This document shows, piece by piece, positions 33,399 to 59,468 of a stretch of 64,000 bases of DNA (positions are counted from its first letter, which is position 1; the number at the start of each line of letters is the position of its first letter). The position numbers and the translations under genes were made by a program. Below the pieces are notes generated by a model that saw only the letters and a list, made by a program, of their open reading frames with translations, searched no databases and was not told the DNA's origin. The DNA is taken from the IMG/VR virus record IMGVR_UViG_3300018962_000001, positions 124,001-188,000 of that record; one strand, 5' to 3'.

Positions 33399-33410
33399 GG
33401 TTGTCCCTCC

Positions 33411-33439
33411 TTGCCGAAGGGACGAACGTGATCTACAGT
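33411..33439 (+). promoter_or_regulatory. Sigma70-type promoter for orphan pentamer RNA
   Basis: TTGCCG-17-TACAGT, 11 nt upstream of the GGNNN tract. Confidence 0.55.
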
Positions 33440-33450
33440 GCGGTGAACGC

Positions 33451-33530
33451 GGCCTGGATCGGCCTGAGACGGCATCGACGGGCAAGGCACGGTTGGGCTA
33501 TCCGTGGCTAGGTATGGTTGGGCGTGGCGC
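33451..33530 (+). ncRNA. Orphan (GGY-NN)16 pentamer-tract RNA, candidate guide
   Basis: 16 in-register pentamers, 13 starting GG; flanked by promoter and terminator. Confidence 0.65.
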
Positions 33531-42078: not shown

Positions 42079-43140
42079 CTAGATCGTTGGAGCCGTATAG
42101 GTTGCGCCCCCAACATAGAGGACGGCCCCGTTCGTCCTATTCCAGACCCCGATCCCAAACTCCCTGTCCATCGTCTGGGCGCGCAGTGGATAGTGCTCGT
42201 GGTCGGCAGCAATCGTCAGATCCCCGGCGAGACCACCATCACGGGTGCGCAGCACCAGCGGTTTCAGCGGCGAGGCGGCATCGAAGCAGAAAAGGTAGCC
42301 GGATGGAACCCACGGCTTCACCCACACCTCCGCTGGCCCGAAGATCCCGATGGCGCGGTTATACATCGTGCCCATATCGAGAGTCCGACCCGGTGCGGTT
42401 CGCTCGTTGGCTCCCGGCTGAATCCGCATATCGAAATAGGGCGTGAAGTTCGAGAATGCCCGGAACGTGGCTTCCGACGCGCGATTGATATACAGCCGGA
42501 CCCCTACGCCAAACCCGTGCTCGACCACCGTCTCAACCACGTTCAGCGCTGCCGCTTCGGTCAGCGTGGTGGTTGCGAGGTAGTGGGTATGTGTGCTTGA
42601 ATCAAACGGCTGCCCGTAGGGATCGTTGGGGATGGCCGTCCCATCCGCATTGACCAACGCCCGCAGCGGCACGTTGACGTTATCCACCAACCGATCGATG
42701 TAGGCAAGGTTGTTCGTTGGGGTAAATAACGCACGCTTAATCTGCCGTTGGATATTCCGAATATCCGCCGTGCGGGCCGCGACATATTGTGCGTCCAGCT
42801 CGGCGACGGTTCGGTTCATCATGTAGAGTCGCGTCCATTGAATCGAGTACTGGAACAGGCGCATCGGAAAGCCCACGGTAACACCGGCGGCGATCTTCTG
42901 CGCGTCTGCCGTGCCGTACTCGTCAACTTCGACCATCTCGCCCTCGGCCACGCCACCGTAGCGGCGCTGGCGATCGACGGTCGGATCGACCAGATCCCCG
43001 ATCATTTCGCGCACAATCATATTGTGGGCATCGAGGTTGGCTTGAATCGCGGCGAACGCACGGTCCTCCCCAAACTGCGCAATCGTCTGATTGGCGGCCT
43101 GGGTGTCAAGGACCTGTAAGGTACCGTATGAGGTTGCCAT
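42079..43140 (-). CDS. Major capsid protein (HK97 fold)
   Basis: 353 aa after scaffold and decoration genes; GGGAGG RBS; HTHYL, FGIGVWNRTNGAVL, YTAPTI terminus typical of lambda-E-like capsids. Confidence 0.85.
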   Translation of the reverse strand: MATSYGTLQVLDTQAANQTIAQFGEDRAFAAIQANLDAHNMIVREMIGDLVDPTVDRQRRYGGVAEGEMVEVDEYGTADAQKIAAGVTVGFPMRLFQYSIQWTRLYMMNRTVAELDAQYVAARTADIRNIQRQIKRALFTPTNNLAYIDRLVDNVNVPLRALVNADGTAIPNDPYGQPFDSSTHTHYLATTTLTEAAALNVVETVVEHGFGVGVRLYINRASEATFRAFSNFTPYFDMRIQPGANERTAPGRTLDMGTMYNRAIGIFGPAEVWVKPWVPSGYLFCFDAASPLKPLVLRTRDGGLAGDLTIAADHEHYPLRAQTMDREFGIGVWNRTNGAVLYVGGATYTAPTI

Positions 43141-43152
43141 TGCAGATCCTCC

Positions 43153-43551
43153 CTAGTATGAGCGCATCGTATGGATGCGCGTGCCGTCGAGCGTTCGTCC
43201 AACCGGCACGGTGCCACCCGTCGAGGCCACCGTATCATAGCCACCCGGCACCGTGCCGGACAGGTACAAGAAGATTCCGGGCGTTAGGCCCGCGCCATAG
43301 CGCACGTTCACATCGTAGTTCAACGTGCATGCTTCACCAATGGCCGCTGCCTGTAACGCCATACCGTCCACCACGGCGGCGGCATTGGCCGCCGCCCCGG
43401 ACGAGCGGTAGATCCGCCCGTCCACTGCGGAGATATAGCACAGGTCACCGGCAGCGATCGGCTCGCCTGCGATCAAGCCCGTATAGCGATTAACGGCGGG
43501 CGGGACCACATGCGAGAGGGTTGGAACCCCACTTTTCGCGATAGCAGCCAT
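43153..43551 (-). CDS. Capsid decoration/cement protein
   Basis: AGEPIAAGDLCYI...GMAL.AAAIGE...LTPG..LYLS...G beta-tulip pattern. Confidence 0.8.
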   Translation of the reverse strand: MAAIAKSGVPTLSHVVPPAVNRYTGLIAGEPIAAGDLCYISAVDGRIYRSSGAAANAAAVVDGMALQAAAIGEACTLNYDVNVRYGAGLTPGIFLYLSGTVPGGYDTVASTGGTVPVGRTLDGTRIHTMRSY

Positions 43552-43566
43552 AATGCTGAGACCTCA

Positions 43567-44370
43567 CTACAGGGAATACATGCCTGTCTGGTGCAGGCGT
43601 GCGCGCTGTTCATCGGTCGCTTGCTGCGAGGCCGATGGCTGCGCACTCCCATCTGGTTTCGGGGGGCGCGGATTACCGGGCGGGATTGGGGTCATGAGTC
43701 GCTGGGCAAGCGATCGTGCTTGTTTCGCCCACTGGACCCGCTGCTCCAGGGCAGCCGCTCCGGGGTCGAGCACTTTCACTTCAGTCGGCCATTCACCCGT
43801 TTCCGTGTCGATTAATTCATTGACCATCGCGGCATACCGCTCGGCCTGGGCACGCGCCGTGGCGAGTTCGCCCTGCGCTTGCTCCTGCTGCACGGTCAGC
43901 TGGGTCGTCAGTTGCGTGGTCTGGGCTTCCAACTCGGTGACTCGGCGTTTGTGATCACCGATCTCGCGTTCGCGTTTATCGGCGAGCTTTTGCCACTGTC
44001 GTTGTTTTTCAGCTTCCTCCTCCTCGGCTTTGCGCGCGGCCTCCGCGGCCTCCGCTGCTGCCGTCGCCGCCGCCGCCGCCGCTTCCTCCTGGGCCACCCG
44101 TTCCTGGGTTTCGCGGTCCAGAATTTGTTGCCGCAAGCGCGCCGCTTCCGCCTCCGCATCCTGCTTGGCCTTGTTCACTTCGTCAAACCGGGCCTTGGGG
44201 ATCATATGGTCCGCCGGGGCAGGCGTTGGTGCGGGGCTGGGCGTTGGTGCAGGATCGGTCCCCGTAGGCGCAGGATCACCGTCACCCGGCGCAGGATCAG
44301 TCGTGAATGACCGGGTAAGGAGGAATAACGACCACAGCGCCAATTGTGGGAGCATGAATGTGCCAAACAT
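43567..44370 (-). CDS. Capsid scaffolding protein
   Basis: DPAP repeats, IPKARFDEVN, QWQKLA coiled coil; GGAG RBS before ATG 44370. Confidence 0.85.
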   Translation of the reverse strand: MFGTFMLPQLALWSLFLLTRSFTTDPAPGDGDPAPTGTDPAPTPSPAPTPAPADHMIPKARFDEVNKAKQDAEAEAARLRQQILDRETQERVAQEEAAAAAATAAAEAAEAARKAEEEEAEKQRQWQKLADKREREIGDHKRRVTELEAQTTQLTTQLTVQQEQAQGELATARAQAERYAAMVNELIDTETGEWPTEVKVLDPGAAALEQRVQWAKQARSLAQRLMTPIPPGNPRPPKPDGSAQPSASQQATDEQRARLHQTGMYSL

Positions 44371-44474
44371 ACAGGAATCTCCGGTACGATCCGTTTCGAG
44401 TTTTTCGTGCAACGCCACGGGATCAATACTGCTAGGATGGGGGGATTGAGCAGCTGCTTCAGCGGGGGAGGTTA

Positions 44475-44520
44475 AACAACAACAGCGCTCGAACTACCTC
44501 GTGAGGTAGTCTGAGCGCTG
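44475..44520 (-). terminator. Terminator-like hairpin in scaffold leader
   Basis: CAGCGCTC-AG-ACTACCTC-AC-GAGGTAGT-TC-GAGCGCTG then TTGTTGTTT. Confidence 0.65.
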
Positions 44521-44556
44521 ACGAAACCGTGCTCCGCAGCTATACGTAATGCCCAT

Positions 44557-44585
44557 AGTATAAGGACCGCTGGTGCTGGTGTCAA
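44557..44585 (-). promoter_or_regulatory. Near-consensus sigma70 promoter for capsid operon
   Basis: TTGACA-17-TATACT. Confidence 0.8.
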
Positions 44586-44599
44586 TAGCGGGGGTTGAC

Positions 44600-44854
44600 T
44601 CAGGCGGGATCTCGCCTCGATTCTGGGTCGGAATCGAGCAGCGGTGAGCTGGAATCATGGCGCAGCCGCTGACGATCCGCGCGGCGTTCCGTTCGCGACA
44701 GCACGCTATGCGGGAGTCCCAAATAGTCCTCCAGGCTGGTCAACAGCAAAATCAGCGCCTGACGTGCCGCCATGCCGAGTCGATAGTGATCTCCTTGGGC
44801 ACTTGGCCGGAGCGGTACCGGAGATTTCGTGGGCGAATCGTGAGCCATACCCAT
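44600..44854 (-). CDS. Small hypothetical protein
   Basis: GAAGGA RBS; helix MAARQALILLLTSLEDYLGL. Confidence 0.6.
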   Translation of the reverse strand: MGMAHDSPTKSPVPLRPSAQGDHYRLGMAARQALILLLTSLEDYLGLPHSVLSRTERRADRQRLRHDSSSPLLDSDPESRRDPA

Positions 44855-44867
44855 TCCTTCTTGCTCC

Positions 44868-45233
44868 CTACAGGGGATTCAGATCTTCGATCACTCGAAT
44901 GGTAAAATAATCGTCGGTTGGAATTGTGAGTCGCTGATCTGGCGACCCATACTGGACCTCGATTTCGGCGAGATAATCCCCCGGCGGGAGCGCGGTCTCG
45001 CCCGGAAGCCACTGAAACTGAAAGCGCGTGGTTACCCGCCCATCATACGTTCCGGTTTCCGCCGTTCCAGGACGTTGAATGACCAACACCCCCCGCTCAT
45101 TCCGCACGAAAAACCAGAACACGCCATTGAGTGTTGGGAGGGGCGTGCCATCCGCCTGCCACAGATCGGCCCGAAACGGCGTGAGTGTATCATTGCGCTT
45201 CTGATAATGAACCAGATTTGACCCGCGATTCAT
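44868..45233 (-). CDS. BppU N-terminal-like Ig-fold anchor protein
   Basis: KRNDT..F...L...G...QWLPGET..PGDYLAEIEV.Y...TIPT...I.V; GGAGGTG RBS. Confidence 0.8.
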   Translation of the reverse strand: MNRGSNLVHYQKRNDTLTPFRADLWQADGTPLPTLNGVFWFFVRNERGVLVIQRPGTAETGTYDGRVTTRFQFQWLPGETALPPGDYLAEIEVQYGSPDQRLTIPTDDYFTIRVIEDLNPL

Positions 45234-45237
45234 TGTG

Positions 45238-48200
45238 TCACCTCCGTACCTGGGCGCGTGTTCGGCTGGGGAGCACCATGCTGCGACAACGATGGCTGAC
45301 CACTGCTGCGCGCATCCGCAGATCACGCACGACGGCGCGAATTGGGAGCGCGAGCGTCGGGATCGCGCCCTGAAGATCGCCTGCCACGACCGCAAAACTG
45401 AGCACGGCGTGGCCGATCGATCGACTCAGCACCTGCCCGGCCCGCAGGGAAGCCTCCACGCTGAGCACGACCAACAGCGCACGCTGTCGGTGCGCTGTCG
45501 CGCCTGGCCCGACATCAAGCGCGATTCCGGCAGTCACCGATCGATACCCCGCACGTCGGGTGCCAGCAGCAATGATACTCGGTGCTGCGCTGACCAGGCT
45601 CCGAGCCACCGTGCTTTTGGCATGGAGGCTTCCCGTTCCAGCGGCGGTGCTGGTGAGCTGCCGCTGGGAATCTCGTCGCACCTGGGCGGTCATCAGATCG
45701 AGGACGCTTATCGCAATCGTATGCCCCCGCGCACTGATTCGATCGACGGTCCCCTGTACCGGGCCATGCCATCCACCAGGCCGGTGCGATTCTTGTGCCC
45801 GCGCGCCGGTGATGGTGGTGGCATGATCCACCTCGCCGAACCGAGTAGCCCCACCCCGACGCAGCACGTGGGCTTCCCCAACGACCCCCGCCGACACTCC
45901 CTGCCGGACCAGTGCTTGCCGGGCCAGCTGGAGACCGGTCTCCAGCGGAACGCCGAGACCGCGCACGGTGCTTGCCTGCGACCCAATCACAGCCTCAGCT
46001 TCCGCGTCCACCGTCCCGCTTCGATCGCGTCGACTCCACCGTTCAGCAAAGGTGCTCCCCGGAATAACGAATCCCGCATGGCGGGCACTTTGCCCCCCCG
46101 GACTCACCAGCGGGACCGCTGCCAGGCTGTCGCTCACGGCCCGAATCAGGCGTTGATCGCCACGCAGCCACGCCACCGCCAGCGCCCCCCACGGAGCTGC
46201 GCGACCAAAGCCCCGTCGCGTCGCGCTGGCCGGGTCGATCCCTTGGCTCACTGAGGGCGCGCGCGCGAGGATCTGGCGGCCTCCGGTTGTCGCGACCGGA
46301 GCAATTGCCTCTGCCACCCACTGGATCATGGTTGTGACTCGATCCCCGATCGTGGTTGTGACGATGGCGATCGGAGCCGTGCGGCGCTGGGCAAGGATGC
46401 GCGTCCCAACACTCATGACTCCCGTACCCCAGCCTGGCACACGGCGCACGGCCTGATGGGCCGCGAGGCCGATCGCTGGAAGATTTGCAGTTGCCGTTTG
46501 GCGAGACGCCGCCGTTCCCGCAGCGATGCCGGTGCCGATCGGCATCACTTGACTACGCAGGCGGGTTAACGCTTGGGCAGTGCGTAGCAGGCCGATCCCT
46601 GGCAGGTCCAGTAGCACGCCCCGCAGCGCCTCACGGCGCTGGGTAAGTCCGGCGGCGGCGGCGGCGATCGCCATGATCCCCCGGCGAATCGTTTGCTGTC
46701 CGCCCAGCGCGAGGGTGCTGCCGGTTCCCGCCGCGATCTGGCGCTGGGTCATGGTGCGATACCCAAGCCCACTGTTCGCCGCCTGGGTGCTGCCGATCCC
46801 GCGCAGGCCGTGGGTCATACGACTCGTGGTCATGGTGATGGGGACGGGCACCGCTGGGACCTTCAGTGCGTGTCCGCCTTTTGCCAGAGGGACCCCGATC
46901 TCGGTGGCGATTGCCACCGAGCGCGTCACCACTTGGCCCGCAGCAACGGTTGTATAATCGAGGTGATAGTCGTCAACATCAAAGATTTGCTGGGTTCCCG
47001 CAGGGACATTATCGATCTGCAAGGCGGCAACAATCCGGGGTGAGTTCCACATATCCACCACGCCCGGATAGCTTTCGTTCAGGACAAACAGCACGCCATC
47101 CGAAAGAAGCCAGCGGTAGGTAATCTGGTCATTCGCGATGTCCACAACAAACTCCAGGCGATGCCATACATCTGGGTCTAGCTCCTGCGTGAATCCATAG
47201 GCTTGCTCCGTTGAGGGCCGGTTGGCATCCCAGCCACGAGTCGCGCCAAACGGTCGCCAGTGCCGCGTTGGCGCGGTGATGATGTACGTAAAGGCAGCCT
47301 CCAAGCGCCGTCCCTGCTGGTACACCGAAAACGGAAACTCGACGGCTTGCGGGGCATTGACCGTGCCCGCATAGCGCCAGTTGATCCGGTAGATCCATCG
47401 CACGGCATCGACCCACGGAAGATCCTGGTACCGATACACATTGACATAGACCGGCTCACTCCCCGTATTGACCCCACCTGAGGTGGTGATTTCGATTTGA
47501 TAGATCTGTCCATCGCCCGATGGAGCCGATGCGTCCGCGACGATTCGATGGGTCTGCGTCATCGTATAGCCGGGCGACCCATCATTCGGGTTGAAGGTTG
47601 TGAGCGCGCCGTGAGTCCAAAATGCCTCGGTGTAGAGTTTCCATGCACTCAGCGCCGCCTGATCCAGCGGACCAAAAAATCCCTGGCTGCTACTGTCTCG
47701 CCGGGTCAGCGCTCCACTTGCAGGGAGGTTGACCCCTCCAGCGCGCTGGAGTGCCCGCCGCCCAATAGGCAGAGCGGCACTGTTTGCGAGGGTTGTGACT
47801 GCCTGGCGGCGTGCGGCGATCGTCCGCCAGATGCCGCGACTTCCGGGCAGCAACACACTGAGTTGTTTCGTGGCCTGGCCGCGCAGGCTTAACGCGGCCA
47901 GGGCTGGCCCGACCCAGGAGCCAGCAAGATGGGCACCTATGCGACGGACCAGCAGGCCGTTAACAGGGATGATGTGGTCCACCCCGCGCGGCTGTCCGAT
48001 CCTCCGCCCAGCACTCGTCTCCAAGGCGATCGAGGTCGTGGCAGCGCGCGTGATCGCGTTGCCAGCCGCAGGCGGGGCATTTAGATTGTCAAAGCTCGCG
48101 GTGTAGGCAGCGGCAGCGGCTCCCGCCGAGGACGTGCGTGCCCCAAATTGGACATATACCGACTCCAGCTCCGCGCCGGTGAGGATGGAGGTACTTTTCC

Positions 48201-50298
48201 ACGCGGTTGTCCCATCCGGCAAGGCATCAGGATGACTCCAGGTCAGCCCGTCTGCCGATACATCTCCATACAGAACCCCCGCCGTTTCCCGAATCCGCCA
48301 CCATCGATGGGCTGCCTCCTGGTAGCTGATCGTAATCGCTCCAATCCCGGTTTGCTGCCATTCCAGCGCCTGGGTATTCCCGTTATACTGAATCCAGACC
48401 GCATCCGCACTGGGATTGACGACCGCGGTTGCTTGCACCCGCAGCAGCACCCGCACGTTCGTTGTTGCGACTAAGGGGAGCACTTCCACGTGAATCGCTT
48501 GGCCGGTCAGGCGATAGGCGCTCGCAGAGGTGTAATAGCCGTAGTCACTCCCTGCTCCGGCGGAGGAAAGACTGATCTGAAGAACGGCTCCCGTTTCTGT
48601 CAGCGTTGGGGTTGCTGTCTTGTGGACGGTCCACATCGGACTCGCCACCGTGTCACTAAACGTATCGACCAGGCTTCCAAGGTTGGCGGTACTACTCATC
48701 ATCTGGATCGTCGGTTCGACGCCAACACCCACCGCCGGACCGATAAAGGCACCGCGCGCCACCGAGTCGATCGAATTTACTCCCAGAGACGCATTCCCGC
48801 TGATCAGCGCTCCTCGGCCAGTGCTTCGGATCGGTGCGGGTCCTGCCGTGGCGGGTATCGCGACGGTGCTGGATCGTGGATAGGCGGATCGATCGCCAAG
48901 TCCTGATGTGTTTGGCGAGGCAATCGTGCTGGCACGGCGAATACTAACGCCCACGCCAACACCGGGGGTGACACTGACTCCGACCGTTGGCTGACGGATG
49001 ACCGCCGTGGCTCCGGCGGCGGCCTCCTTATAGGTCACAATACCGCCAATCCAGGTTGCCGTGGCCGACAGGGTAAAGCCCACGGTTTCCGCTGCCCCAC
49101 CCACAAGGTCGCGGGTCCCCACGGTTAACGCGGCAGTCGTGGCGTCAGGATAACTCCCGCGACTCGCGTATGGACTGGCAACGCTGACCGACGCGACGGT
49201 CGCCGCATTCGCCAGCAGGCCGATCGCGAGGCGATTGCCACTGCCAAGGGCGGCACTGGTCGTCGCACTCGCAGCAGTCCCCATCCCGCCGCTGAACCCC
49301 GTGCGATCAACGGGATTGGTTGTGGCAATGCCAACAAACTCAAATGCGATGATCGAAAGATTGCCGGACCCAGCGCCACGCTGCACGGTGATCAAGGGAT
49401 TCGTGGTTGTCTGATTGTTTGCGTAGCGCCAGATCTGAATTTCATCACTCCCGCTAACCTGAACAAAATCGCGCGTGAAGCCGAGACCGCTGTTGTAGCT
49501 GACACTGGTAATCTCACTGGTTCCCGACATGCGATTATTCAGGGCGACGATCAGGGACGATCCTGATCGCGCGGCTTGCGGGAAGGAAAGGTTAAAGGTC
49601 GTGGTCGAGATTCCCTGGTTCCGGGCGGATTGGCAGAGGCCAAACGCACTGGGGGTCGCTGGGACGAGAAACACCGTGAGTCCACTATAGGCTCCGCTTC
49701 CCGCGTCATGCGATCGTGATCCGGTGACTCCTTCGGCAAGATCGTAGCCATACGCGACAAACTGGCGGCAATGAGCCGTGGTGGTCCCACCACTATTTTG
49801 ATCGGTCTCCTTGAACATCCGCCAATCCGCGGTGTACGTCGTGCCGGGCACCGCGCTCGTCTCTACCGTTAACCGCATCGCGCCGCGATAGCCAAGCCCT
49901 GCCCCATTGGTGGCAGCCGCATCCGTATGGGTGGTTCCGGTGGTACCACTGTACGACAAGAGACCGACCGCGCGCGCGCCCGCCGTGGTGAGCACGCCAG
50001 AGATCCCGCAACATGACCAGACACCGCGGCCCGATGTTCCCCAGGAAATGACGGGCGCGGCGGCGTTCCAGGCCGCTGAGAACAGCGCGGTACAGGTGGC
50101 GTTCGTCGAATCCTGGACCTGGCCTTCCTTGGTCCATCCGGTCGTTGCCGTTGTCACGGTGATGGCCGTGCTCGTTTTGATCGACACAAACACCCACAGC
50201 GTATCCTCGCTTGTCAGTGCAGGCGAGGATGGCAACGTGGGCGTTACCGACGCGGCGCTGAAGGTGCCCGTGGTTTTGTTTTTATGGCGAATGGGCAC
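45238..50298 (-). CDS. Giant (1686 aa) virion appendage protein: beta-sandwich, LamG-like and jelly-roll domains separated by 20-aa periodic spacers
   Basis: WWRIRETAGVLYGDVSADGLTW LamG-like motif; 5+6+26 twenty-residue units starting with Arg. Confidence 0.8.
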   Translation of the reverse strand: MPIRHKNKTTGTFSAASVTPTLPSSPALTSEDTLWVFVSIKTSTAITVTTATTGWTKEGQVQDSTNATCTALFSAAWNAAAPVISWGTSGRGVWSCCGISGVLTTAGARAVGLLSYSGTTGTTHTDAAATNGAGLGYRGAMRLTVETSAVPGTTYTADWRMFKETDQNSGGTTTAHCRQFVAYGYDLAEGVTGSRSHDAGSGAYSGLTVFLVPATPSAFGLCQSARNQGISTTTFNLSFPQAARSGSSLIVALNNRMSGTSEITSVSYNSGLGFTRDFVQVSGSDEIQIWRYANNQTTTNPLITVQRGAGSGNLSIIAFEFVGIATTNPVDRTGFSGGMGTAASATTSAALGSGNRLAIGLLANAATVASVSVASPYASRGSYPDATTAALTVGTRDLVGGAAETVGFTLSATATWIGGIVTYKEAAAGATAVIRQPTVGVSVTPGVGVGVSIRRASTIASPNTSGLGDRSAYPRSSTVAIPATAGPAPIRSTGRGALISGNASLGVNSIDSVARGAFIGPAVGVGVEPTIQMMSSTANLGSLVDTFSDTVASPMWTVHKTATPTLTETGAVLQISLSSAGAGSDYGYYTSASAYRLTGQAIHVEVLPLVATTNVRVLLRVQATAVVNPSADAVWIQYNGNTQALEWQQTGIGAITISYQEAAHRWWRIRETAGVLYGDVSADGLTWSHPDALPDGTTAWKSTSILTGAELESVYVQFGARTSSAGAAAAAYTASFDNLNAPPAAGNAITRAATTSIALETSAGRRIGQPRGVDHIIPVNGLLVRRIGAHLAGSWVGPALAALSLRGQATKQLSVLLPGSRGIWRTIAARRQAVTTLANSAALPIGRRALQRAGGVNLPASGALTRRDSSSQGFFGPLDQAALSAWKLYTEAFWTHGALTTFNPNDGSPGYTMTQTHRIVADASAPSGDGQIYQIEITTSGGVNTGSEPVYVNVYRYQDLPWVDAVRWIYRINWRYAGTVNAPQAVEFPFSVYQQGRRLEAAFTYIITAPTRHWRPFGATRGWDANRPSTEQAYGFTQELDPDVWHRLEFVVDIANDQITYRWLLSDGVLFVLNESYPGVVDMWNSPRIVAALQIDNVPAGTQQIFDVDDYHLDYTTVAAGQVVTRSVAIATEIGVPLAKGGHALKVPAVPVPITMTTSRMTHGLRGIGSTQAANSGLGYRTMTQRQIAAGTGSTLALGGQQTIRRGIMAIAAAAAGLTQRREALRGVLLDLPGIGLLRTAQALTRLRSQVMPIGTGIAAGTAASRQTATANLPAIGLAAHQAVRRVPGWGTGVMSVGTRILAQRRTAPIAIVTTTIGDRVTTMIQWVAEAIAPVATTGGRQILARAPSVSQGIDPASATRRGFGRAAPWGALAVAWLRGDQRLIRAVSDSLAAVPLVSPGGQSARHAGFVIPGSTFAERWSRRDRSGTVDAEAEAVIGSQASTVRGLGVPLETGLQLARQALVRQGVSAGVVGEAHVLRRGGATRFGEVDHATTITGARAQESHRPGGWHGPVQGTVDRISARGHTIAISVLDLMTAQVRRDSQRQLTSTAAGTGSLHAKSTVARSLVSAAPSIIAAGTRRAGYRSVTAGIALDVGPGATAHRQRALLVVLSVEASLRAGQVLSRSIGHAVLSFAVVAGDLQGAIPTLALPIRAVVRDLRMRAAVVSHRCRSMVLPSRTRAQVRR

Positions 50299-50300
50299 CG

Positions 50301-50612
50301 TCAGGCTCCAAGATCATCAAATCCGTAGGAGAACTCGTCGCTAACCGTATTGACGTTAAACAGCCCCGCACCGATCGGCGGGGTGCTCGCTATGGGACTG
50401 CCGGTCGTGGGATGGCGTGGACTGGGGGGCACCTCATAGGTCCACCGCCGCCGCCGCCGGACGTTGGCGGCCCAGAACCGCAGGGTGTTGGGCGTGAGGT
50501 TCGTAATCACGATTCCGTTTTCGACATTCGCGCCGGTCACCGTGTCATACGAAACAAGGACTCGAATCAACCCCTGCTCGTATTCAGCCACCAGATCCGT
50601 CACCACAGCCAT
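50301..50612 (-). CDS. Small beta-rich hypothetical (structural) protein
   Basis: AAGGAGG RBS; operon position. Confidence 0.7.
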   Translation of the reverse strand: MAVVTDLVAEYEQGLIRVLVSYDTVTGANVENGIVITNLTPNTLRFWAANVRRRRRWTYEVPPSPRHPTTGSPIASTPPIGAGLFNVNTVSDEFSYGFDDLGA

Positions 50613-50627
50613 GATCCCTCCTTCGCG

Positions 50628-51272
50628 CTAGTTGGAGATGGTCCAATCCACGCGCAGGGTGTCATTGGTGGCTAAGACGGCATTCGACGAGAAATTGTCC
50701 TCCGCATACAGCACCGATCCCGCCACTGTCGCCGAGTCAAATAATCCGGCTCCATACGCCGTGGCCGCGCCGGTGGCGGTATAGGTGTACTGGACAAGCT
50801 GGCTGAATTGTGCGCCGTTGGTGGCGGGAGCCGTGTAGTTGCCCGTAATCACCGTTGCCGCCGCACGCGCGAGGCCCAGGGTCGTGAACTCGTTGGTGGT
50901 AACCCCCGCCGAGGTTGACCCGAGCGACAGATTGGCTTTCGATTTGGTGAGGGCAGCGCTGGCAACAGCGATAATCTTAAACTGGTTGGTATTGACCGCC
51001 CCCGGCGAGGCTCCGCCCCCAAAGATCTGAAGCGCCTGACGATTCGCACCCGAATCGACGCGCTCGTTACAGGACAGATCGACCCAGAGGGTGTCCCACC
51101 TCAAGATCTGCCCCGCCTCCATCACAGGTCGCCGTTGCACGGCGACGACCAACCCAAATTCTCCCGGCTGCCGGGTGGCTTTCCGGCCACCAGGGTAGAT
51201 CCGCATGGCATCCCAGGAGGCCGGGCGAAAAATGCGTCCCAGCAGGGGATGCGTATAGAGCACCTGCGTCAT
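50628..51272 (-). CDS. Beta-sandwich virion fibre subunit (N..V..G...IAV...E....GLAR...GLFD...GS.L....F...L...DTL.V.W family)
   Basis: AAGGAG RBS; motif pattern typical of phage minor tail/fibre proteins, related in pattern to 24799..25428. Confidence 0.75.
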   Translation of the reverse strand: MTQVLYTHPLLGRIFRPASWDAMRIYPGGRKATRQPGEFGLVVAVQRRPVMEAGQILRWDTLWVDLSCNERVDSGANRQALQIFGGGASPGAVNTNQFKIIAVASAALTKSKANLSLGSTSAGVTTNEFTTLGLARAAATVITGNYTAPATNGAQFSQLVQYTYTATGAATAYGAGLFDSATVAGSVLYAEDNFSSNAVLATNDTLRVDWTISN

Positions 51273-51940
51273 GACCCGGACTCCTTCTGCTGTGTGGCGG
51301 TGGCATCGCTACTCAGATCCTCGCCTTGGCGGGACCGTTCGGCACGAGCGAGCGTTTCGGCGGCCTGGTCGGCTTGCTGCCGGAGCTGTTCCTCCGGCGG
51401 CGGCGCAGTCTGATTCGTCGGATTGAGATTCATCGCCCGAAACCCGTCCCCCTTCCGGTATAACCGCTCCTGGCTGGGATCAACGTCCCAGGATCGTCCA
51501 TGTGGATCAGTGACCGTGACCGGGGTGGACCGGGGACTCGTCTGGTACTGGCGGAGCGCACTATCCCGCAAGATCGTCCACTGGGCGACCAGGGTATTCA
51601 CCGCAACCTCCGCCGCCGCCAGTGCGCCTTCATCTGCCGCATCGACGACTCCGTCGTCTTCCACGCCTTTGAGAAAGGTGGTAATCGCGGTTCGTGCGCC
51701 ATCAAAAACCGGCTTTAAGTCACGGGCCAGGGTTTTGAGGTCAGCCCGATAGGGATTCCAGCCCTGCGCCTGGAGCGCGGCCACGGCTGTTTGGGGGGCT
51801 TTAATACAGATTTCGCCGCGCGCATCCCAGAGATCAACGAGCACATCACCATTGACCTCAACCGTGGTCGCTGCCTGAGAGGCAAGCTGAACAGCCCCGC
51901 CACTTTCGACGGTCGCGCCGATGGCTTGTGGATCAGCCAT
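51269..51940 (-). CDS. Hypothetical protein, first gene of structural operon
   Basis: AGGAGG RBS; ATGA overlap with next gene. Confidence 0.75.
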   Translation of the reverse strand: MADPQAIGATVESGGAVQLASQAATTVEVNGDVLVDLWDARGEICIKAPQTAVAALQAQGWNPYRADLKTLARDLKPVFDGARTAITTFLKGVEDDGVVDAADEGALAAAEVAVNTLVAQWTILRDSALRQYQTSPRSTPVTVTDPHGRSWDVDPSQERLYRKGDGFRAMNLNPTNQTAPPPEEQLRQQADQAAETLARAERSRQGEDLSSDATATQQKESGS

Positions 51941-51976
51941 ACGTATCCTCCTGGTGTCGGTGGGGGGCGTGCCTAC

Positions 51977-52004
51977 AGTATAGCATCTGCCACGCGGTTG
52001 TCAC
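51977..52004 (-). promoter_or_regulatory. Promoter of structural operon
   Basis: GTGACA-16-TATACT with extended -10 TG. Confidence 0.65.
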
Positions 52005-52034
52005 ATGGTCCGTGCAAACTCCGATCGATGCCCC

Positions 52035-52063
52035 TTGACATACGCTGATACATGCGCTAAGCT
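52035..52063 (+). promoter_or_regulatory. Phage-motif sigma70 promoter
   Basis: TTGACA-17-TAAGCT with shared spacer motif. Confidence 0.75.
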
Positions 52064-52090
52064 GGGAGCAAGCAAGGGAGGTACCGGACA

Positions 52091-52486
52091 ATGAGGGATC
52101 GTGAACTGCTGAACCGGGTCCGCGAAATATTAGCCCGCATCGGATTGAAGCCGACGCACCAGCAAAGCGGCCTGGATACGCGACGGATCGATCCGACCAT
52201 GCTTGCCAGGAGCGGCGGGCGCATGCCGTATCGGATGAAACCACAGCACCGCGCCGGGTATCGACTCGCCAACCATGTCCTCCGAGTTGCGGATCAGCAC
52301 CAGCACACGATGCGGATCGTGTGGCAACCGGAGTCGGACAACTACGCAGCGACCACCATGCCCCAATACCAGTATGTGTTGGAGCGTGCCCGTGCCGCCT
52401 GCGAATCCGCAGGCGTTCGGGTCATCACCGATACGCAGTATCCATATGATCTCATTCTTTTGCCCACTGAGGAGGATCGCCCATGA
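52091..52486 (+). CDS. Hypothetical protein
   Basis: GGGAGG RBS; first gene after promoter. Confidence 0.75.
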   Translation: MRDRELLNRVREILARIGLKPTHQQSGLDTRRIDPTMLARSGGRMPYRMKPQHRAGYRLANHVLRVADQHQHTMRIVWQPESDNYAATTMPQYQYVLERARAACESAGVRVITDTQYPYDLILLPTEEDRP

Positions 52487-53205
52487 CTCGATCGATTGGC
52501 CCTGGATGGAATGGCTACGCCACCATCGATAACCTGGAGGCCATTGCCACGGCCATCAGGACGCTTCTCGCCGGACGCCGCTATGTATTTATCGCGGTTA
52601 ACGAATCGTATCCCTACCGAGTCGACGCCCGCACCGGCCAGCGACTTAGCCCGGAAAAAGCCACCTCGCGCCAGTCCCTGCGAGTCTGGTATAACGATGA
52701 CGTGAAGCACCCGGCGACCGCGCGCTTTGGCGGCCTCACCGCGATCGATACCTATGGAACCTGGGGAATTACGACCAGCGCGCGGGACACCATGAAAGTT
52801 AATGAGCTGGACACGTTGCAAACCCCTTACATCAGCTTCGATGGGCGCGGGGAGCACGCGAAAATCCAGATCCGGCACTACAATGGCATGAGCGAGGTGT
52901 TAAACTGGACCATCGCCGTTGAAGCCGAGCCGGATGCCGATGCGACTTGGTGGCCGCGCCTGTCGCCGGAGCGGGTCATGGAGCGGCTTACGCAGCAGCG
53001 AGTCAACGTCACCGCCTGCTATATGGACGGGGGAACGCATCATCCCTATTGGGTGATCGCAGGCTATACCAGCGGCGGCGAATTTGCGGTGCTATACGAC
53101 GATACCACCTGGAGCGTTCGGGGTGATCGATCGATGCAGCCGGTGGTTGAGGAGTGGCTCGCGCCGATCCTGGGTGGGCGAGTCTATCGGGAACGCCCGG
53201 TATGA
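52483..53205 (+). CDS. Hypothetical protein
   Basis: GAGGAGG RBS; ATGA overlaps. Confidence 0.75.
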   Translation: MTRSIGPGWNGYATIDNLEAIATAIRTLLAGRRYVFIAVNESYPYRVDARTGQRLSPEKATSRQSLRVWYNDDVKHPATARFGGLTAIDTYGTWGITTSARDTMKVNELDTLQTPYISFDGRGEHAKIQIRHYNGMSEVLNWTIAVEAEPDADATWWPRLSPERVMERLTQQRVNVTACYMDGGTHHPYWVIAGYTSGGEFAVLYDDTTWSVRGDRSMQPVVEEWLAPILGGRVYRERPV

Positions 53206-57372: not shown

Positions 57373-57954
57373 ATGTTAAGCTTCATGCACCGCTGGATTG
57401 GCCTGCTGCTCGTACTCCTGATGCTGGCCGCTTGCGGCACGAACAACGCCCCGCCACCACAAAGTGATGCGCGCGGGACGAGCTGGAATGTCTCAACCTT
57501 CGGCGGTGATCTCGCCGTCGATGTCGATCGCGCCTACTACCGGATTGAAGGCGAGGTGATTGGGGAGCTGCGCGATCTGGAGCGCTATCGCAGCAGCAGT
57601 TCCTTTACTGCCGTGAATGGGGTTGCGTCCGGCTCCAGTTGGAGTGAAACAGACGGAAAAGGGTTTGTCCGGGTGCGTGTCTCTCGGATCGAACCCGCAG
57701 CGCCCCATATCGGCACGGTCGAGCAAGTGCTCCTGCTCAAATCCACGGATAGCAAGATTAAGGCGGTCTTGCCCGGCGATCGGGTGACCTTTATCTGCCG
57801 GGCGAATTTTGAAGCGGTTGCCCCCGTCCTCGTCGATCAGGTGTACACCGCCGAGGATAAAGAGCAAGGCGGCGTATGGGAATTCGATTACTGCCGTATG
57901 GACACGCCGCAGCTGGGCGTTCCCGACCCCACCCCCACCATCCCCAAGGAGTAA
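57373..57954 (+). CDS. Lipoprotein
   Basis: Signal peptide with lipobox LAAC; AAGGA RBS. Confidence 0.8.
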   Translation: MLSFMHRWIGLLLVLLMLAACGTNNAPPPQSDARGTSWNVSTFGGDLAVDVDRAYYRIEGEVIGELRDLERYRSSSSFTAVNGVASGSSWSETDGKGFVRVRVSRIEPAAPHIGTVEQVLLLKSTDSKIKAVLPGDRVTFICRANFEAVAPVLVDQVYTAEDKEQGGVWEFDYCRMDTPQLGVPDPTPTIPKE

Positions 57955-58023
57955 CGACTCAATCCACACACGGAAGGGGGGATCATCACGATCCCCCCTC
58001 GGCTTGCTGAAAGGAAGAACGCG

Positions 58024-58761
58024 ATGCCTAAATATCACACGGCACACGATACGCTGCGCACCAAGAACCAGCTTCACGTGGTAGGGCACTGTCCAATCTC
58101 GCACAAGCGCCAGTTTGCTGCCTTGGAACCGGCGACCAGCGAGGCCAAGCGACTCAGCGACGAGTCCGGGTATGTCATCCTTCCCTACCAAGCAGTGTGT
58201 TGCCCGTATTACCACGTCGGCAAGCAGCGGTGTCCCCGTTGTTCGGGGTATCTGAAGCTGGCAGGCCATGTGTGCCCCAATCCTGATATGACCGTGCCAC
58301 CACGCGGCTTCGATCTAGCCGATCTTCCCGCGATTGACTCCGAGTATGCTGCGCTGGGCGCGCAGCTCACGGCCCTTTCACGCGATCTCGCGCAGATTCG
58401 CCAGGGCATTCTCGATCCGGCGCTCCGGGCGGGCCAGCCCGTGGCGGTGTATCGGGCAATGGCAATCGCTGAATGTGAGCGAATCAAAGATCGCCGCCGG
58501 GAGCTTCAGCCGATTCGCCATCGCCTCCATCAGTTTCGCGACTATCAGGCAAAAGTCGCGCGGATCAGCACGTGGAGCGCCGATCCCCCGGATCTCGCCG
58601 ACACCCGTGATCTCCTCATGCAGATTCGGACCTATTTTGCCATCCGTGAGATCGAGGGCGATCTCACGCCTGTGGAACAGGCACTCCGAACGGCAATCTC
58701 ACGCTGGCTTGTGGCAAATCAGCCCCCCGACCCACTGGAAGCTGCCGATGAAGCCCCTTGA
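58024..58761 (+). CDS. Hypothetical protein with Zn-binding motifs and coiled coil
   Basis: CP..HKRQF, CCPYYHVG, CPRC...HVC. Confidence 0.7.
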   Translation: MPKYHTAHDTLRTKNQLHVVGHCPISHKRQFAALEPATSEAKRLSDESGYVILPYQAVCCPYYHVGKQRCPRCSGYLKLAGHVCPNPDMTVPPRGFDLADLPAIDSEYAALGAQLTALSRDLAQIRQGILDPALRAGQPVAVYRAMAIAECERIKDRRRELQPIRHRLHQFRDYQAKVARISTWSADPPDLADTRDLLMQIRTYFAIREIEGDLTPVEQALRTAISRWLVANQPPDPLEAADEAP

Positions 58762-58786
58762 CTTGCGCGCCGGAATACGCTAAGAT
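58758..58786 (+). promoter_or_regulatory. Phage-motif sigma70 promoter
   Basis: TTGACT-17-TAAGAT with shared spacer motif. Confidence 0.7.
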
Positions 58787-58814
58787 GAGTGAGTAGCAAG
58801 ACAGGAGCGCACGT

Positions 58815-59468
58815 ATGACATATCCACTCACGCAGGAGGGACCGGCGGCGGCGGGCCGGTATCTGACACGCGAGGAAGCCCGGCAGATCTACCACCAGTA
58901 CGACTCGGAGCATACCGCCCTGAAGGGTCAGATCGATCGTCTCAGCGAGTGTGTGCTGGCACGCGAGATCGCTGAAGGGGCAGCGGCGGCGGTTCGCTTT
59001 GCCGATGATCTGACCTCTGACCCGTGGACCGGATTCTTTCTGTCGGTTGCGGAGCAACCGACGCGGTTTCCCGGCGTCTTTTGCAATGCCCGCTGCGAGG
59101 CAGAGGGACGAATCGCGTATCCCGACAAGTCCGATGCCGCGTGGCATGGCGCGCAAACGGGACATTGCCATGCCCCGACCTGCGGCCAATGGGATGTACG
59201 GCACGAGGCTCCGTTATGGAGTCCCCAGAACCCCATCTATCTGATCGTGCGGCACCGCAGCGCGGCGCTGGACTATCTGGATGGCTATGCCGTGATCGCC
59301 GCGCGCGTGGGAGCCTTCCTGATCGCCGCTGTGCGGCCCCAGGATGCCGTCTATTGCCGCGACCGCATGATCAGCGGTATCCGGGTGCTGGGCGCGCGCG
59401 AGTTCTTTCCCACGCTCGCCACGGCGGTCACGGTGGCGGCGGGGCTGGATCGGTTTGAAAGAGTCTAA
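58815..59468 (+). CDS. Hypothetical protein
   Basis: AGGAG RBS. Confidence 0.7.
   Translation: MTYPLTQEGPAAAGRYLTREEARQIYHQYDSEHTALKGQIDRLSECVLAREIAEGAAAAVRFADDLTSDPWTGFFLSVAEQPTRFPGVFCNARCEAEGRIAYPDKSDAAWHGAQTGHCHAPTCGQWDVRHEAPLWSPQNPIYLIVRHRSAALDYLDGYAVIAARVGAFLIAAVRPQDAVYCRDRMISGIRVLGAREFFPTLATAVTVAAGLDRFERV

What the first reader, a model, noticed from the sequence alone, without database searches (positions are those of the whole stretch)
45364..48996. Cryptic exact 20-residue ruler in the 1686-aa virion protein
Seen: apparently low-complexity spacers resolve into units of exactly 20 aa with no nucleotide-level repeat. There are 5 units at 48996-48697, 6 at 48048-47686 (one of 21 aa) and 26 consecutive units at 46923-45364 (exactly 26 x 60 nt). 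In the 26-unit block, position 1 is Arg in 22 units (others K, Q, Q, H), e.g. RGIGSTQAANSGLGYRTMTQ / RQIAAGTGSTLALGGQQTIR / RGIMAIAAAAAGLTQRREAL. Units are small/hydrophobic with a second basic patch near positions 15-16. Strict length without sequence identity implies a structural register. Inference: each unit is a beta strand donated to one copy of the small beta-sandwich protein 50628..51272. The giant protein would then be a tape measure for a beaded filament carrying lectin-like domains at set distances, anchored through the BppU-like protein 44868..45233.
Basis: partly seen in the sequence, partly recalled or inferred. Interest (0 to 1): 0.82.

Follow-up and report, generated by a model that had tools for sequence, protein, structure and literature searches.

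The report
Giant phage fibre "rope" with 20-residue units
A 1686-residue structural protein of an uncultured jumbo phage really does contain 37 units of exactly 20 amino acids; they most likely act as docking sites that string many copies of a small fibre protein into a long beaded adhesion fibre, an architecture only recently seen in a few phages by cryo-EM.

Summary
In ORF 45238..50298(-), Arg recurs every 20 residues (22 of 26 units in aa 1126-1645, P about 5e-17). A hydrophobic pattern has the same period and a period of 2. There is no nucleotide repeat. The protein is not the tape measure: that is the 2576-aa ORF 25755..33485. It alternates lectin-like globular domains with three arrays of 5, 6 and 26 units, and has no full-length homologue among 5.8 billion proteins. 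Its domain B (aa 535-750) is the hallmark of an uncharacterised phage family (phrog_14065, e.g. Streptomyces phage Hiyaa gp13), in which the domain is followed by 2-37 strictly 20-residue units. AlphaFold2 leaves such an array unfolded (pLDDT 28). The neighbour g214 resembles the Gp80 fibre subunit of podophage GP4. In GP4, Bas63 and A1002, Gp80-like dimers dock in tandem by beta-sheet augmentation on an extended "rope" (about 24 residues per dimer in A1002). Binding is untested, and a self-assembling trimeric beta-hairpin shaft remains a serious rival. Novelty: new variant of a known kind.

The parts
45238..50298 (-). Giant structural protein (1686 aa, GTG start, weak SD): proposed rope / fibre-dock protein
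   Evidence: ORF. Best coding potential in this frame throughout. No Pfam or PHROG hit. Only itself found among 5.8e9 proteins.
48997..50298 (-). N-terminal region aa 1-434, small-residue-rich, beta-like, no 20-aa period; function unknown
   Evidence: No R-R pairs at lag 20 before about aa 340. No family hits.
48697..48996 (-). Array 1: five 20-aa units (aa 435-534), R at position 1 of all five
   Evidence: (z=5.6 at lag 20).
48049..48696 (-). Domain B (aa 535-750): lectin-like domain, hallmark of the phrog_14065 family
   Evidence: tblastn to Streptomyces phages Hiyaa, Spocter and Ponzi. blastp to Hiyaa gp13, 3e-12. blastp to orf2235 aa 1187-1395, 6e-17. Hits 24 of 47 array proteins from viral contigs, down to 1.6e-13.
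47686..48048 (-). Array 2: six units (aa 751-871), one of 21 aa, least regular; the first unit resembles the canonical family unit by eye
   Evidence: The blastp alignments to Hiyaa gp13 and orf2235 run into the first unit(s).
46924..47685 (-). Domain C (aa 872-1125): Trp/Tyr-rich globular domain, possibly a second ConA/LamG-like domain
   Evidence: Only a weak blastp match to the N-terminal domain of Hiyaa gp13 (E=0.28). No relative of similar length found.
45364..46923 (-). Array 3: 26 consecutive 20-aa units (aa 1126-1645), net charge +33. Unit pattern: R-x-h-x-h-x-h-(P/A/G)-x-x-h-x-L-x-(R)-(R)-Q-x-h-x
45241..45363 (-). C-terminal 41-aa basic tail (aa 1646-1686); possible anchor
   Evidence: Sequence only; role inferred.
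50628..51272 (-). g214: candidate docked fibre subunit, Gp80-like beta-sandwich in its C-terminal two thirds; strong SD + ATG
   Evidence: ESM Atlas: feature score 0.95 with 210 shared features to a PF23140 Gp80 cluster; structure TM 0.63/0.72 to a cluster in which 16% of members carry PF23140. hhalign against a Gp80 alignment: E=0.019 over aa 134-206. Pfam hmmscan negative. SD.
51269..51940 (-). g223: first gene of the cassette; its stop overlaps the g214 start; function unknown
   Evidence: Coordinates. No hits. No similarity to g214.
50301..50612 (-). g103: small protein immediately upstream of the giant gene (2-nt gap); function unknown
44868..45233 (-). g121: BppU_N-like small beta protein immediately downstream (4-nt gap); candidate anchor or adaptor
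   Evidence: ESM Atlas: features 0.96; structure TM 0.77-0.80 to BppU_N-containing clusters.
19242..20312 (-). Paralogous cassette in tail protein orf2235 (17163..23870): domain-B homologue (aa 1187-1395) followed by about 7 units of 20 aa with R at positions 1 and 6 (aa 1404-1543)

Best explanation
The 1686-aa protein is the 'rope' (fibre-dock protein) of a very long chain-like fibre. Its three arrays of 20-residue units (5 + 6 + 26) are extended segments that are unfolded on their own. Each unit would offer short beta strands (hydrophobic at positions 3, 5, 7 and 11, 13) plus an Arg anchor. A copy, probably a dimer, of a small beta-sandwich fibre protein would dock there by beta-sheet augmentation. 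The best candidate is the Gp80-like g214, encoded two genes upstream. The lectin-like globular domains between the arrays sit at distances fixed by the unit count. The BppU_N-like g121 or the basic C-terminal tail would tie the fibre to the virion.

Scaling from A1002 (11 dimers in about 300 A), 37 units would give roughly 100 nm of beaded fibre, used for reversible binding to host surface glycans.

Shown: the register, the domain architecture, the homology of domain B, the tight operon, and the Gp80-likeness of g214 (moderate evidence).

Inferred: docking, stoichiometry, attachment point and function.
For: (1) The exact 20-aa register holds over 26 units without one indel. It is selected at the protein level only.

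(2) The unit has beta-strand character: period 2 and hydrophobic period 20. Composition is rich in V, I, T, A and G, so it is not a typical disordered linker.

(3) A related array (Hiyaa gp13 family, 17-sequence alignment) gets pLDDT 28 and almost no secondary structure in AlphaFold2. This is as expected for a segment that folds only in a complex.

(4) g214 resembles Gp80 fibre-subunit clusters, with weak profile support.

(5) Precedent from cryo-EM:
- A1002 gp39 fibre-dock has 268 residues for 11 dimers, about 24 residues per dimer and about 300 A. A globular Ig domain interrupts its rope. Each dimer forms an augmented beta sheet with the rope (PMC13730344).
- GP4 has five gp80 dimers on a separate rope protein. 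Bas63 has two whisker dimers on a rope extension of the collar protein (PMC12609058).

(6) In GP4 the gene next to gp80 (gp79, 325 aa) is Gly/Ala-rich with Gly period 10/20 and Asp/Glu period 20.

(7) Gene order is Gp80-like, small gene, giant gene, BppU_N-like, with 2-15-nt gaps or overlaps. The small genes have strong SD + ATG; the giant gene has GTG and a weak SD. That fits many subunits per rope.

(8) In the related family the array gene is nearly always preceded by a highly conserved 148-aa beta-sandwich gene. Arrays were detected in 42 of 47 downstream ORFs, with unit numbers from 2 to about 37.
Against: - No prediction or measurement of binding was possible.
- g214 has no Pfam PF23140 hit, no BLAST similarity to gp80 and no detectable homologues. 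Its assignment rests on language-model features, a predicted-structure TM of 0.6-0.7, and an hhalign E of 0.019 with probability 2.4%.
- The arrays show no sequence similarity to any solved chain.
- That GP4 gp79 is the rope is my inference. It is not in the PDB by sequence.
- The partner conserved in the Hiyaa-type family (phrog_26662) is not Gp80-like by hhalign or Foldseek. It looks like tail-collar-fibre N-terminal domains and a Bxb1 tail-tip chain. It also occurs in cyanophage Pam4 without an array neighbour, so it could be an adaptor rather than a docked bead.
- AlphaFold2 monomer runs also fail on trimeric fibre shafts.
- Our units do not match the canonical unit of that family.
Confidence: 0.42

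Rival explanations
1. The arrays form a self-assembling homotrimeric fibre shaft built from one short beta hairpin per 20 residues, like a triple beta-spiral or another intertwined beta fibre. It would act as a rigid spacer between lectin-like domains. The small neighbouring proteins would be adaptors or chaperones, not beads.
For: - The unit pattern is hydrophobic at 3, 5, 7, then Pro/Gly/Ala at 8-10, then hydrophobic at 11, 13, then a polar/basic loop. From my own knowledge, this resembles the adenovirus/reovirus shaft motif (hydrophobic c, e, g, k, m with a Gly/Pro turn).
- Fibres with alternating shafts and globular domains are common in phages.
- AlphaFold2 monomer failure is also typical of trimeric shafts.
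- The partner of the related family looks like an attachment domain of tail-collar fibres and can occur without arrays.
- Unit number varies from 2 to about 37, like a stalk of adjustable length.
Against: - Covariation among 186 non-redundant canonical double units shows i,i+2 and i,i+20 couplings but no antiparallel i+j=constant ladder. There is no charge pairing between the conserved basic and acidic positions.
- Net charge is +33 over 520 residues, with an Arg at every unit start. A threefold-packed shaft would concentrate this charge.
- No trimerisation or chaperone domain was recognised.
Confidence: 0.3
2. Each unit binds one repeating subunit of the virion lattice itself, either capsid capsomers or major-tail-protein rings. 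The protein would lie along the head or tail as a decoration or ruler and display the lectin domains.
For: - The gene lies in the head module, just upstream of the scaffold-like gene and the major capsid protein. In Hiyaa it lies between the major capsid protein and the head-to-tail adaptor.
- Length is strictly conserved across 17 homologues of the Hiyaa array: 511 residues almost without indels, and one 41-residue (two-unit) deletion.
Against: - Unit number does not scale with tape-measure length in the two phages compared. Hiyaa has about 22 units for a TMP of about 941 aa. This phage has 26-37 units for a TMP of 2576 aa.
- The same cassette sits in a tail-tip-side protein (orf2235) in this genome.
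- Relatives of the capsid protein lack the gene.
Confidence: 0.1
3. The arrays fold on their own as a single-chain beta-solenoid with one 20-residue rung per turn and a ladder of stacked Arg. It would possibly bind a polyanion such as DNA or teichoic acid.
For: - Twenty residues per rung is typical of several beta-solenoids (own knowledge: pentapeptide-repeat proteins, FHA-type and curli-type repeats).
- i,i+20 couplings are seen in the canonical units.
- The arrays carry a strong positive charge.
Against: - AlphaFold2 with an alignment gave no structure at all for the more regular Hiyaa-type array (pLDDT 28). In my experience it normally predicts regular solenoids confidently.
- No Pfam repeat family matches.
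- i,i+20 coupling can equally come from recent tandem duplication.
Confidence: 0.08

Closest known systems
Rope / fibre-dock proteins of chain-like fibres: GP4 rope protein with gp80 dimers (PDB 8JOU), A1002 nozzle-rope gp39 with gp40/gp41 dimers, Bas63 collar protein with whisker gp5
   Same: - An extended polypeptide carries tandem docking sites of about 20-25 residues.
- A small Gp80-like beta-sandwich gene lies close by.
- A globular domain is embedded in the rope (the Ig domain in A1002 gp39).
- The genes lie in the head/neck part of the structural module.
- The rope is not expected to fold alone.
   Different: - There are 37 units, against 2, 5 and 11 dimers in the solved cases.
- The virus is a jumbo siphophage-like phage rather than a podophage or myophage.
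- The rope is interrupted by large lectin-like domains.
- The unit motif is Arg-phased rather than the Gly-rich pattern of GP4 gp79.
- There is no sequence similarity to known ropes.
- Docking is untested here.
phrog_14065 family (Streptomyces phage Hiyaa gp13 'minor tail protein', Keanu gp13, Galactica gp11, and more than 40 IMG/VR contigs); function unknown
   Same: - It has a homologous domain B immediately followed by arrays of exactly 20 residues.
- A basic residue sits at position 1 of the units.
- Unit number is variable (2 to about 37).
- The gene lies in a structural operon.
- There is no Pfam family, no solved structure and no AlphaFold fold.
   Different: - The canonical unit K-T-R-x-L-G-x-A-x-E-T-D-T-A-x-P-L is absent here.
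- The PHROG model does not hit our protein.
- The family's conserved 148-aa neighbour (phrog_26662) is missing from the window.
- Our protein has three arrays and extra domains.
Tail tape measure proteins
   Same: Very long virion protein with a length-related periodicity.
   Different: - The real TMP of this phage is ORF 25755..33485 (phrog_167, with M23 and SLT domains).
- From my own knowledge TMPs are mostly alpha-helical, whereas this protein is beta-like, carries lectin domains, and lies upstream of the capsid gene.
Triple beta-spiral shafts (adenovirus fibre, reovirus sigma1)
   Same: Repeats of 15-20 residues with alternating hydrophobic residues and a Pro/Gly turn, acting as a spacer that carries a receptor-binding domain.
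   Different: There is no evidence of trimerisation, each repeat has a conserved Arg, no hairpin covariation is seen in the related family, and there is no sequence relation.

Membership tests
Chain-like-fibre rope / fibre-dock protein | Extended segment made of tandem docking sites of about 20-25 residues | tested here: met
   37 units of 20 residues. A1002 has 268 residues for 11 dimers.
Chain-like-fibre rope / fibre-dock protein | A Gp80-fold fibre subunit (PF23140) is encoded nearby | tested here: inconclusive
   g214: Atlas features 0.95 with 210 shared; TM 0.63/0.72 to a partly PF23140 cluster; hhalign E=0.019, probability 2.4%. Pfam hmmscan and BLAST are negative.
Chain-like-fibre rope / fibre-dock protein | Subunit dimers dock on the rope by beta-sheet augmentation | not testable with these tools
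   No multimer prediction was available, and fused constructs are not accepted by the structure tool.
Chain-like-fibre rope / fibre-dock protein | The rope segment has no fold of its own | tested here: inconclusive
   The Hiyaa-type array with a 17-sequence alignment gave pLDDT 28.
Chain-like-fibre rope / fibre-dock protein | Sequence homology to a solved rope | tested here: not met
   Profiles A1 and A2 against the PDB gave no relevant hit.
phrog_14065 (Hiyaa gp13-like) | Domain B homologue | tested here: met
   blastp 1.6e-13 to 3e-3 against 24 family members; Hiyaa gp13 3e-12.
phrog_14065 (Hiyaa gp13-like) | Array of exact 20-residue units with a basic first residue directly after domain B | tested here: met
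   Array 2 follows domain B. Family arrays.
phrog_14065 (Hiyaa gp13-like) | Canonical unit motif K-T-R-x-L-G-x-A-x-E-T-D-T-A, or a match to the PHROG model | tested here: not met
   The unit HMM scores our arrays no better than shuffles. No PHROG hit.
phrog_14065 (Hiyaa gp13-like) | Adjacent conserved 148-aa gene (phrog_26662) | tested here: not met
   The HMM of 48 members finds nothing in the window.
Tail tape measure protein | Match to TMP families and position between the tail chaperones and the distal tail protein | tested here: not met
   No TMP PHROG hit. The real TMP is 25755..33485. Our gene lies upstream of the capsid gene.
Single-chain beta-solenoid repeats (pentapeptide, FHA-type) | Match to a repeat family, or a confident solenoid model | tested here: not met
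   No Pfam hit at E<=0.1. The related array is unfolded in AlphaFold2.
Triple beta-spiral shaft | Homotrimeric intertwined hairpin repeats | not testable with these tools
   Only the sequence pattern could be compared. Covariation in the related family shows no hairpin ladder.

The most novel reading that the evidence does not exclude
The exact 20-residue unit is a general, so far undescribed docking module of phage fibres. Proteins with 2 to about 37 such units (phrog_14065 relatives and this divergent giant) would be programmable ropes. They would string tens of small beta-sandwich subunits and lectin domains into beaded adhesins up to about 100 nm long, with fibre length and valency set simply by unit number. 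This would extend the chain-like-fibre principle from three or four podo/myophages to siphophages of actinobacteria and to jumbo phages.
Probability: 0.3. Interest if true: 0.75.

Novelty: new variant of a known kind. Interest (0 to 1): 0.62.

Why it matters
Chain-like fibres built from a rope plus docked dimers were first seen in 2023 and are known from only a handful of cryo-EM structures, with 2-11 docked dimers. A rope with 37 sites interrupted by lectin domains would be the largest by far and the first in a long-tailed jumbo phage.

The work also uncovered a widespread, unannotated 20-residue repeat family. It has no Pfam entry, its PHROG is labelled 'unknown function', and SEA-PHAGES calls it 'minor tail protein' or 'hypothetical protein'. 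The family occurs in culturable Streptomyces phages (Hiyaa, Keanu, Galactica, Spocter), so the mechanism can be tested at the bench.

If unit number sets fibre length and valency, these proteins are a natural, modular scaffold for displaying binding domains at fixed spacing. They would also help annotate host-recognition genes that sequence methods currently miss.

Tried and rejected
- Tape measure protein: rejected. The true TMP is the 2576-aa ORF.
- Wrong-frame artefact of GC-rich DNA for the Ala/Gly/Arg-rich C-terminus: rejected by six-frame coding potential.
- Full-length or domain-C homologues among 5.8e9 proteins: none. The first search hit the candidate cap because of low-complexity words.
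- Megablast to phage genomes: no match.
- Profile of 40-residue double units against 1.84e9 representatives: only the protein itself and two translated satellite repeats, which are spurious.
- Relatives of the capsid protein (13 viral contigs): they lack the giant gene and its small neighbours.
- ESM Atlas on the array: uninformative.
- PDB sequence searches with the protein, the unit profile and the Hiyaa-array profile: nothing relevant.
- Homologues of g214 in viral and metagenome contigs: none, so g214 could not be folded with an alignment.
- Test that the Hiyaa-type partner (phrog_26662) is Gp80-like: not supported by hhalign or Foldseek.
- Test that our units are homologous to the canonical K-T-R...E-T-D-T-A unit: not supported.
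- Hairpin charge-pair covariation in canonical units: absent.
- Fetching a relative of A1002 through accession LC064302 was a wrong guess; it is an N4-like phage.
- The GP4 and Bxb1 papers are not held in the library. So the identity of the GP4 rope gene and of chain 9D93_Ra stays unverified.
Full report
**Origin and context.** The window belongs to IMG/VR contig IMGVR_UViG_3300018962_000001 (204.7 kb), an uncultured jumbo phage. It has no nucleotide match to any sequenced phage.

The minus strand carries a long structural operon:
- The major capsid protein is 42079..43140 (phrog_3990, 1e-32).
- The true tape measure protein is the 2576-aa ORF 25755..33485 (phrog_167 6e-74, with M23 peptidase and SLT domains).
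- Three further giant ORFs of 2235, 1426 and 1991 aa follow it. The last has tail-fibre PHROG hits.

The 1686-aa ORF of the finding (45238..50298) lies upstream of a coiled-coil scaffold-like gene and the capsid gene. It sits in a tightly packed cassette, g223-g214-g103-giant-g121-g84, with overlaps or gaps of 2-15 nt.

**The observation.**
- Arg autocorrelation peaks only at lags 20, 40 and 60 (z=9.5, 7.8, 6.7).
- In aa 1126-1645, position 1 is Arg in 22 of 26 units, P about 5e-17 after correcting for phase.
- Hydrophobic residues share the period of 20 and also alternate with period 2 in a phase kept across the whole block.
- The unit profile is R-x-h-x-h-x-h-(P/A/G)-x-x-h-x-L-x-(R)-(R)-Q-x-h-x.
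- Beyond Arg the units are only slightly alike: 10.9% identity in register against 8.7% out of register. A BLOSUM autocorrelation without Arg is weak.
- There is no DNA repeat. Nucleotide identity is 0.33 in register against 0.29 out of register, and position 1 uses four Arg codons.
- The annotated frame wins the coding-potential comparison everywhere, so the odd composition is not a frame artefact.

Array 2 is the least regular.

**What the protein is related to.** It has no Pfam or PHROG hit and no full-length relative among 5.8 billion proteins. One piece, domain B (aa 535-750), does have relatives.

- *Within the genome.* Domain B matches aa 1187-1395 of the tail protein orf2235 (E=6e-17). 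There it is again followed by about seven 20-residue units with Arg at positions 1 and 6.
- *Outside the genome.* It matches Streptomyces phage Hiyaa gp13. That is a 1110-aa 'minor tail protein' encoded between the capsid gene and the head-to-tail adaptor. The C-terminal roughly 450 residues of Hiyaa gp13 are also cut into 20-residue units (Lys lag 20, z=8.2).
- *Length conservation.* Seventeen homologues down to 26% identity align over 511 residues almost without indels. The one large deletion is 41 residues, i.e. two units.
- *The conserved neighbour.* The gene just upstream of Hiyaa gp13 (gp12, 149 aa, phrog_26662) is far more conserved than the array protein. Using it as bait brought in 59 viral loci. 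In 42 of the 47 loci with a called downstream ORF, that ORF carries the array. Unit numbers run from 2 to about 37, and the canonical unit is K-T-R-x-L-G-x-A-x-E-T-D-T-A-x-P-L-x-x-x.
- *Domain B again.* It hits 24 of these proteins.
- *Annotation status.* None of these proteins has a Pfam repeat family. The PHROG (14065) is of unknown function.

Our units do not score against the canonical unit model better than shuffles do. The window therefore holds a divergent variant of this family, not a member in the strict sense.

**Structure.** AlphaFold2 on the Hiyaa-type array with its 17-sequence alignment gave pLDDT 28 and essentially no secondary structure. In my experience, regular single-chain solenoids are usually predicted confidently. 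So an autonomous monomeric fold is unlikely. A fold that needs partners, hetero- or homo-oligomeric, is the natural reading.

**The neighbours.**
- g214 (50628..51272) resembles clusters of the 'Podophage GP4 fiber I protein gp80' family PF23140. The feature score is 0.95 with 210 shared features, and TM is 0.63/0.72. An alignment of GP4-like Gp80 proteins aligns to g214 aa 134-206 with hhalign E=0.019 but a probability of only 2.4%. Pfam and BLAST see nothing. g214 has no detectable homologues. So this assignment is moderate, not firm.

**The precedent.** Gp80 is the bead of the 'chain-like fibre'.
- In GP4, five gp80 dimers are linked by an elongated, separately encoded rope protein.
- In Bas63, two whisker dimers sit on a rope-like extension of the collar protein (PMC12609058).
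- In A1002, eleven dimers of gp40/gp41 dock on the fibre-dock domain of gp39. The domain spans residues 243-468, 3-32 and 96-107, i.e. 268 residues, and is about 300 A long. An Ig-like domain interrupts it. Each dimer forms an augmented beta sheet with the rope (PMC13730344). That is about 24 rope residues and about 27 A per dimer.
- In the GP4 genome, gp80 (PF23140 6.5e-41; PDB 8JOU, ten chains) is followed by gp79. This is a 325-aa Gly/Ala-rich protein with Gly period 10/20 (z=4.8/4.1) and Asp/Glu period 20 (z=5.8). I infer that gp79 is the rope, but could not confirm it.

**Synthesis.** The following features match the rope-and-bead architecture:
- exact short units with beta character;
- no fold of their own;
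- a Gp80-like gene in the same tight cassette;
- a small anchor-like beta protein just downstream;
- globular domains embedded in the rope;
- strong ribosome-binding sites with ATG on the small genes, against GTG with a weak site on the giant gene.

Scaling from A1002, 37 units give roughly 100 nm. I therefore put the rope model first, at about 0.42.

**Why not higher.**
- Docking is untested.
- The Gp80 assignment of g214 is soft.
- The conserved partner of the better-sampled Hiyaa-type family folds confidently (pLDDT 90) but is not Gp80-like. Its best matches are a chain of the mycobacteriophage Bxb1 tail tip (9D93_Ra, TM 0.75 by target) and N-terminal parts of 'tail collar fiber' proteins.
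- That partner also occurs in cyanophage Pam4 next to proteins without arrays. It could therefore be an attachment adaptor.
- The arrays could then be a homotrimeric hairpin shaft. The pattern of hydrophobic residues at 3, 5, 7, a Pro/Gly turn, and hydrophobic residues at 11, 13 is reminiscent of triple beta-spirals (own knowledge). AlphaFold2 monomer runs fail on those too.
- Against the shaft: covariation in 186 non-redundant canonical double units shows same-face (i,i+2) and unit-to-unit (i,i+20) couplings but no antiparallel ladder or charge pairing. The net charge of +33 would also be concentrated in a trimer.
- A lattice-binding ruler along head or tail is less likely. Unit number does not follow tape-measure length in the two phages compared, and the cassette also sits in a tail-end protein.

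**Verdict.**
- The register is real and selected at the protein level.
- The thing is best called a new variant of a known kind: a giant, lectin-studded, Arg-phased rope.
- It belongs, through its domain B, to a broad and undescribed family of 20-residue arrays.
- That family includes culturable Streptomyces phages, in which the decisive experiments are easy.

Noticed in passing
window 17163..23870 (-), especially 19242..20312: The 2235-aa tail protein after the tape measure carries a paralogous cassette. It has a domain-B homologue (aa 1187-1395) followed by about 7 units of 20 aa with Arg at positions 1 and 6, then an odd Ala/Gly/Pro/Arg/His-rich stretch (aa about 1544-1760).
   Followed up: partly
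window 25755..33485 (-): The true tape measure protein is 2576 aa, with M23 peptidase (aa 2173-2272) and SLT transglycosylase (aa 2325-2417) domains. At 1.5 A per residue this implies a tail of roughly 380 nm.
   Followed up: partly
window 42079..52878 (-) versus loci L003-L015: Relatives of the capsid protein have the order terminase, portal, a roughly 230-aa gene, a roughly 295-aa gene, capsid. In this jumbo phage, portal and terminase are not upstream. Only g132 (43153..43551) and the capsid gene are shared. g132 matches the N-terminal part of the roughly 295-aa protein of the relatives.
   Followed up: partly
loci L026-L084 (IMG/VR); Hiyaa MK279841 9071..12871: A conserved gene pair occurs in dozens of viral contigs and in Streptomyces phages Hiyaa, Spocter, Keanu and Galactica. 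It consists of a 148-aa protein (phrog_26662) followed by a domain-B protein with a 20-residue array of 2 to about 37 units (phrog_14065). There is no Pfam family for the repeat. The partner is 65% identical where the array protein is only 26-28% identical.
   Followed up: yes
L019 (Ralstonia phage GP4 MH638294) 57947..58924 of the record: GP4 gp79, encoded right after the fibre subunit gp80, is Gly/Ala-rich with 10/20-residue periodicity (e.g. IDIGAAGDSKIAMLLSGAGR / IDLTGSGLLEAAMLGSGIGS). It is probably the 'rope' of the solved fibre I, but it is absent from the PDB by sequence.
   Followed up: partly
model mea09cf71f2bc (Hiyaa gp12 family): The only significant PDB match of the 148-aa partner is chain Ra of the mycobacteriophage Bxb1 tail-tip model 9D93 (TM 0.75 by target, 23% identity). 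I could not find out which Bxb1 protein this chain is.
   Followed up: no
L097 (Pseudanabaena phage Pam4 ON014756) 22383..22829 of the record: Cyanophage Pam4 gp34 is 62% identical to Hiyaa gp12. It sits after the tape measure and baseplate genes, and the next genes (gp35 'polysaccharide lyase', gp36) have no 20-residue array. So the partner protein is not restricted to array-bearing fibres.
   Followed up: partly
P0002, P0003: The only other hits of the unit profile among 1.84 billion representatives are translations of perfect tandem DNA satellites, probably eukaryotic. They are false positives.
   Followed up: yes
Hiyaa-family alignment A2, last 45 columns: The array proteins of the Hiyaa group end in a strongly conserved tail (K-Q-R-P-A-D-x-L-x-P-G, then three G-P-x-L nonamers, then T-T-S-G-G-S). 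It might be the virion anchor. Our protein ends in an unrelated basic 41-residue tail.
   Followed up: no
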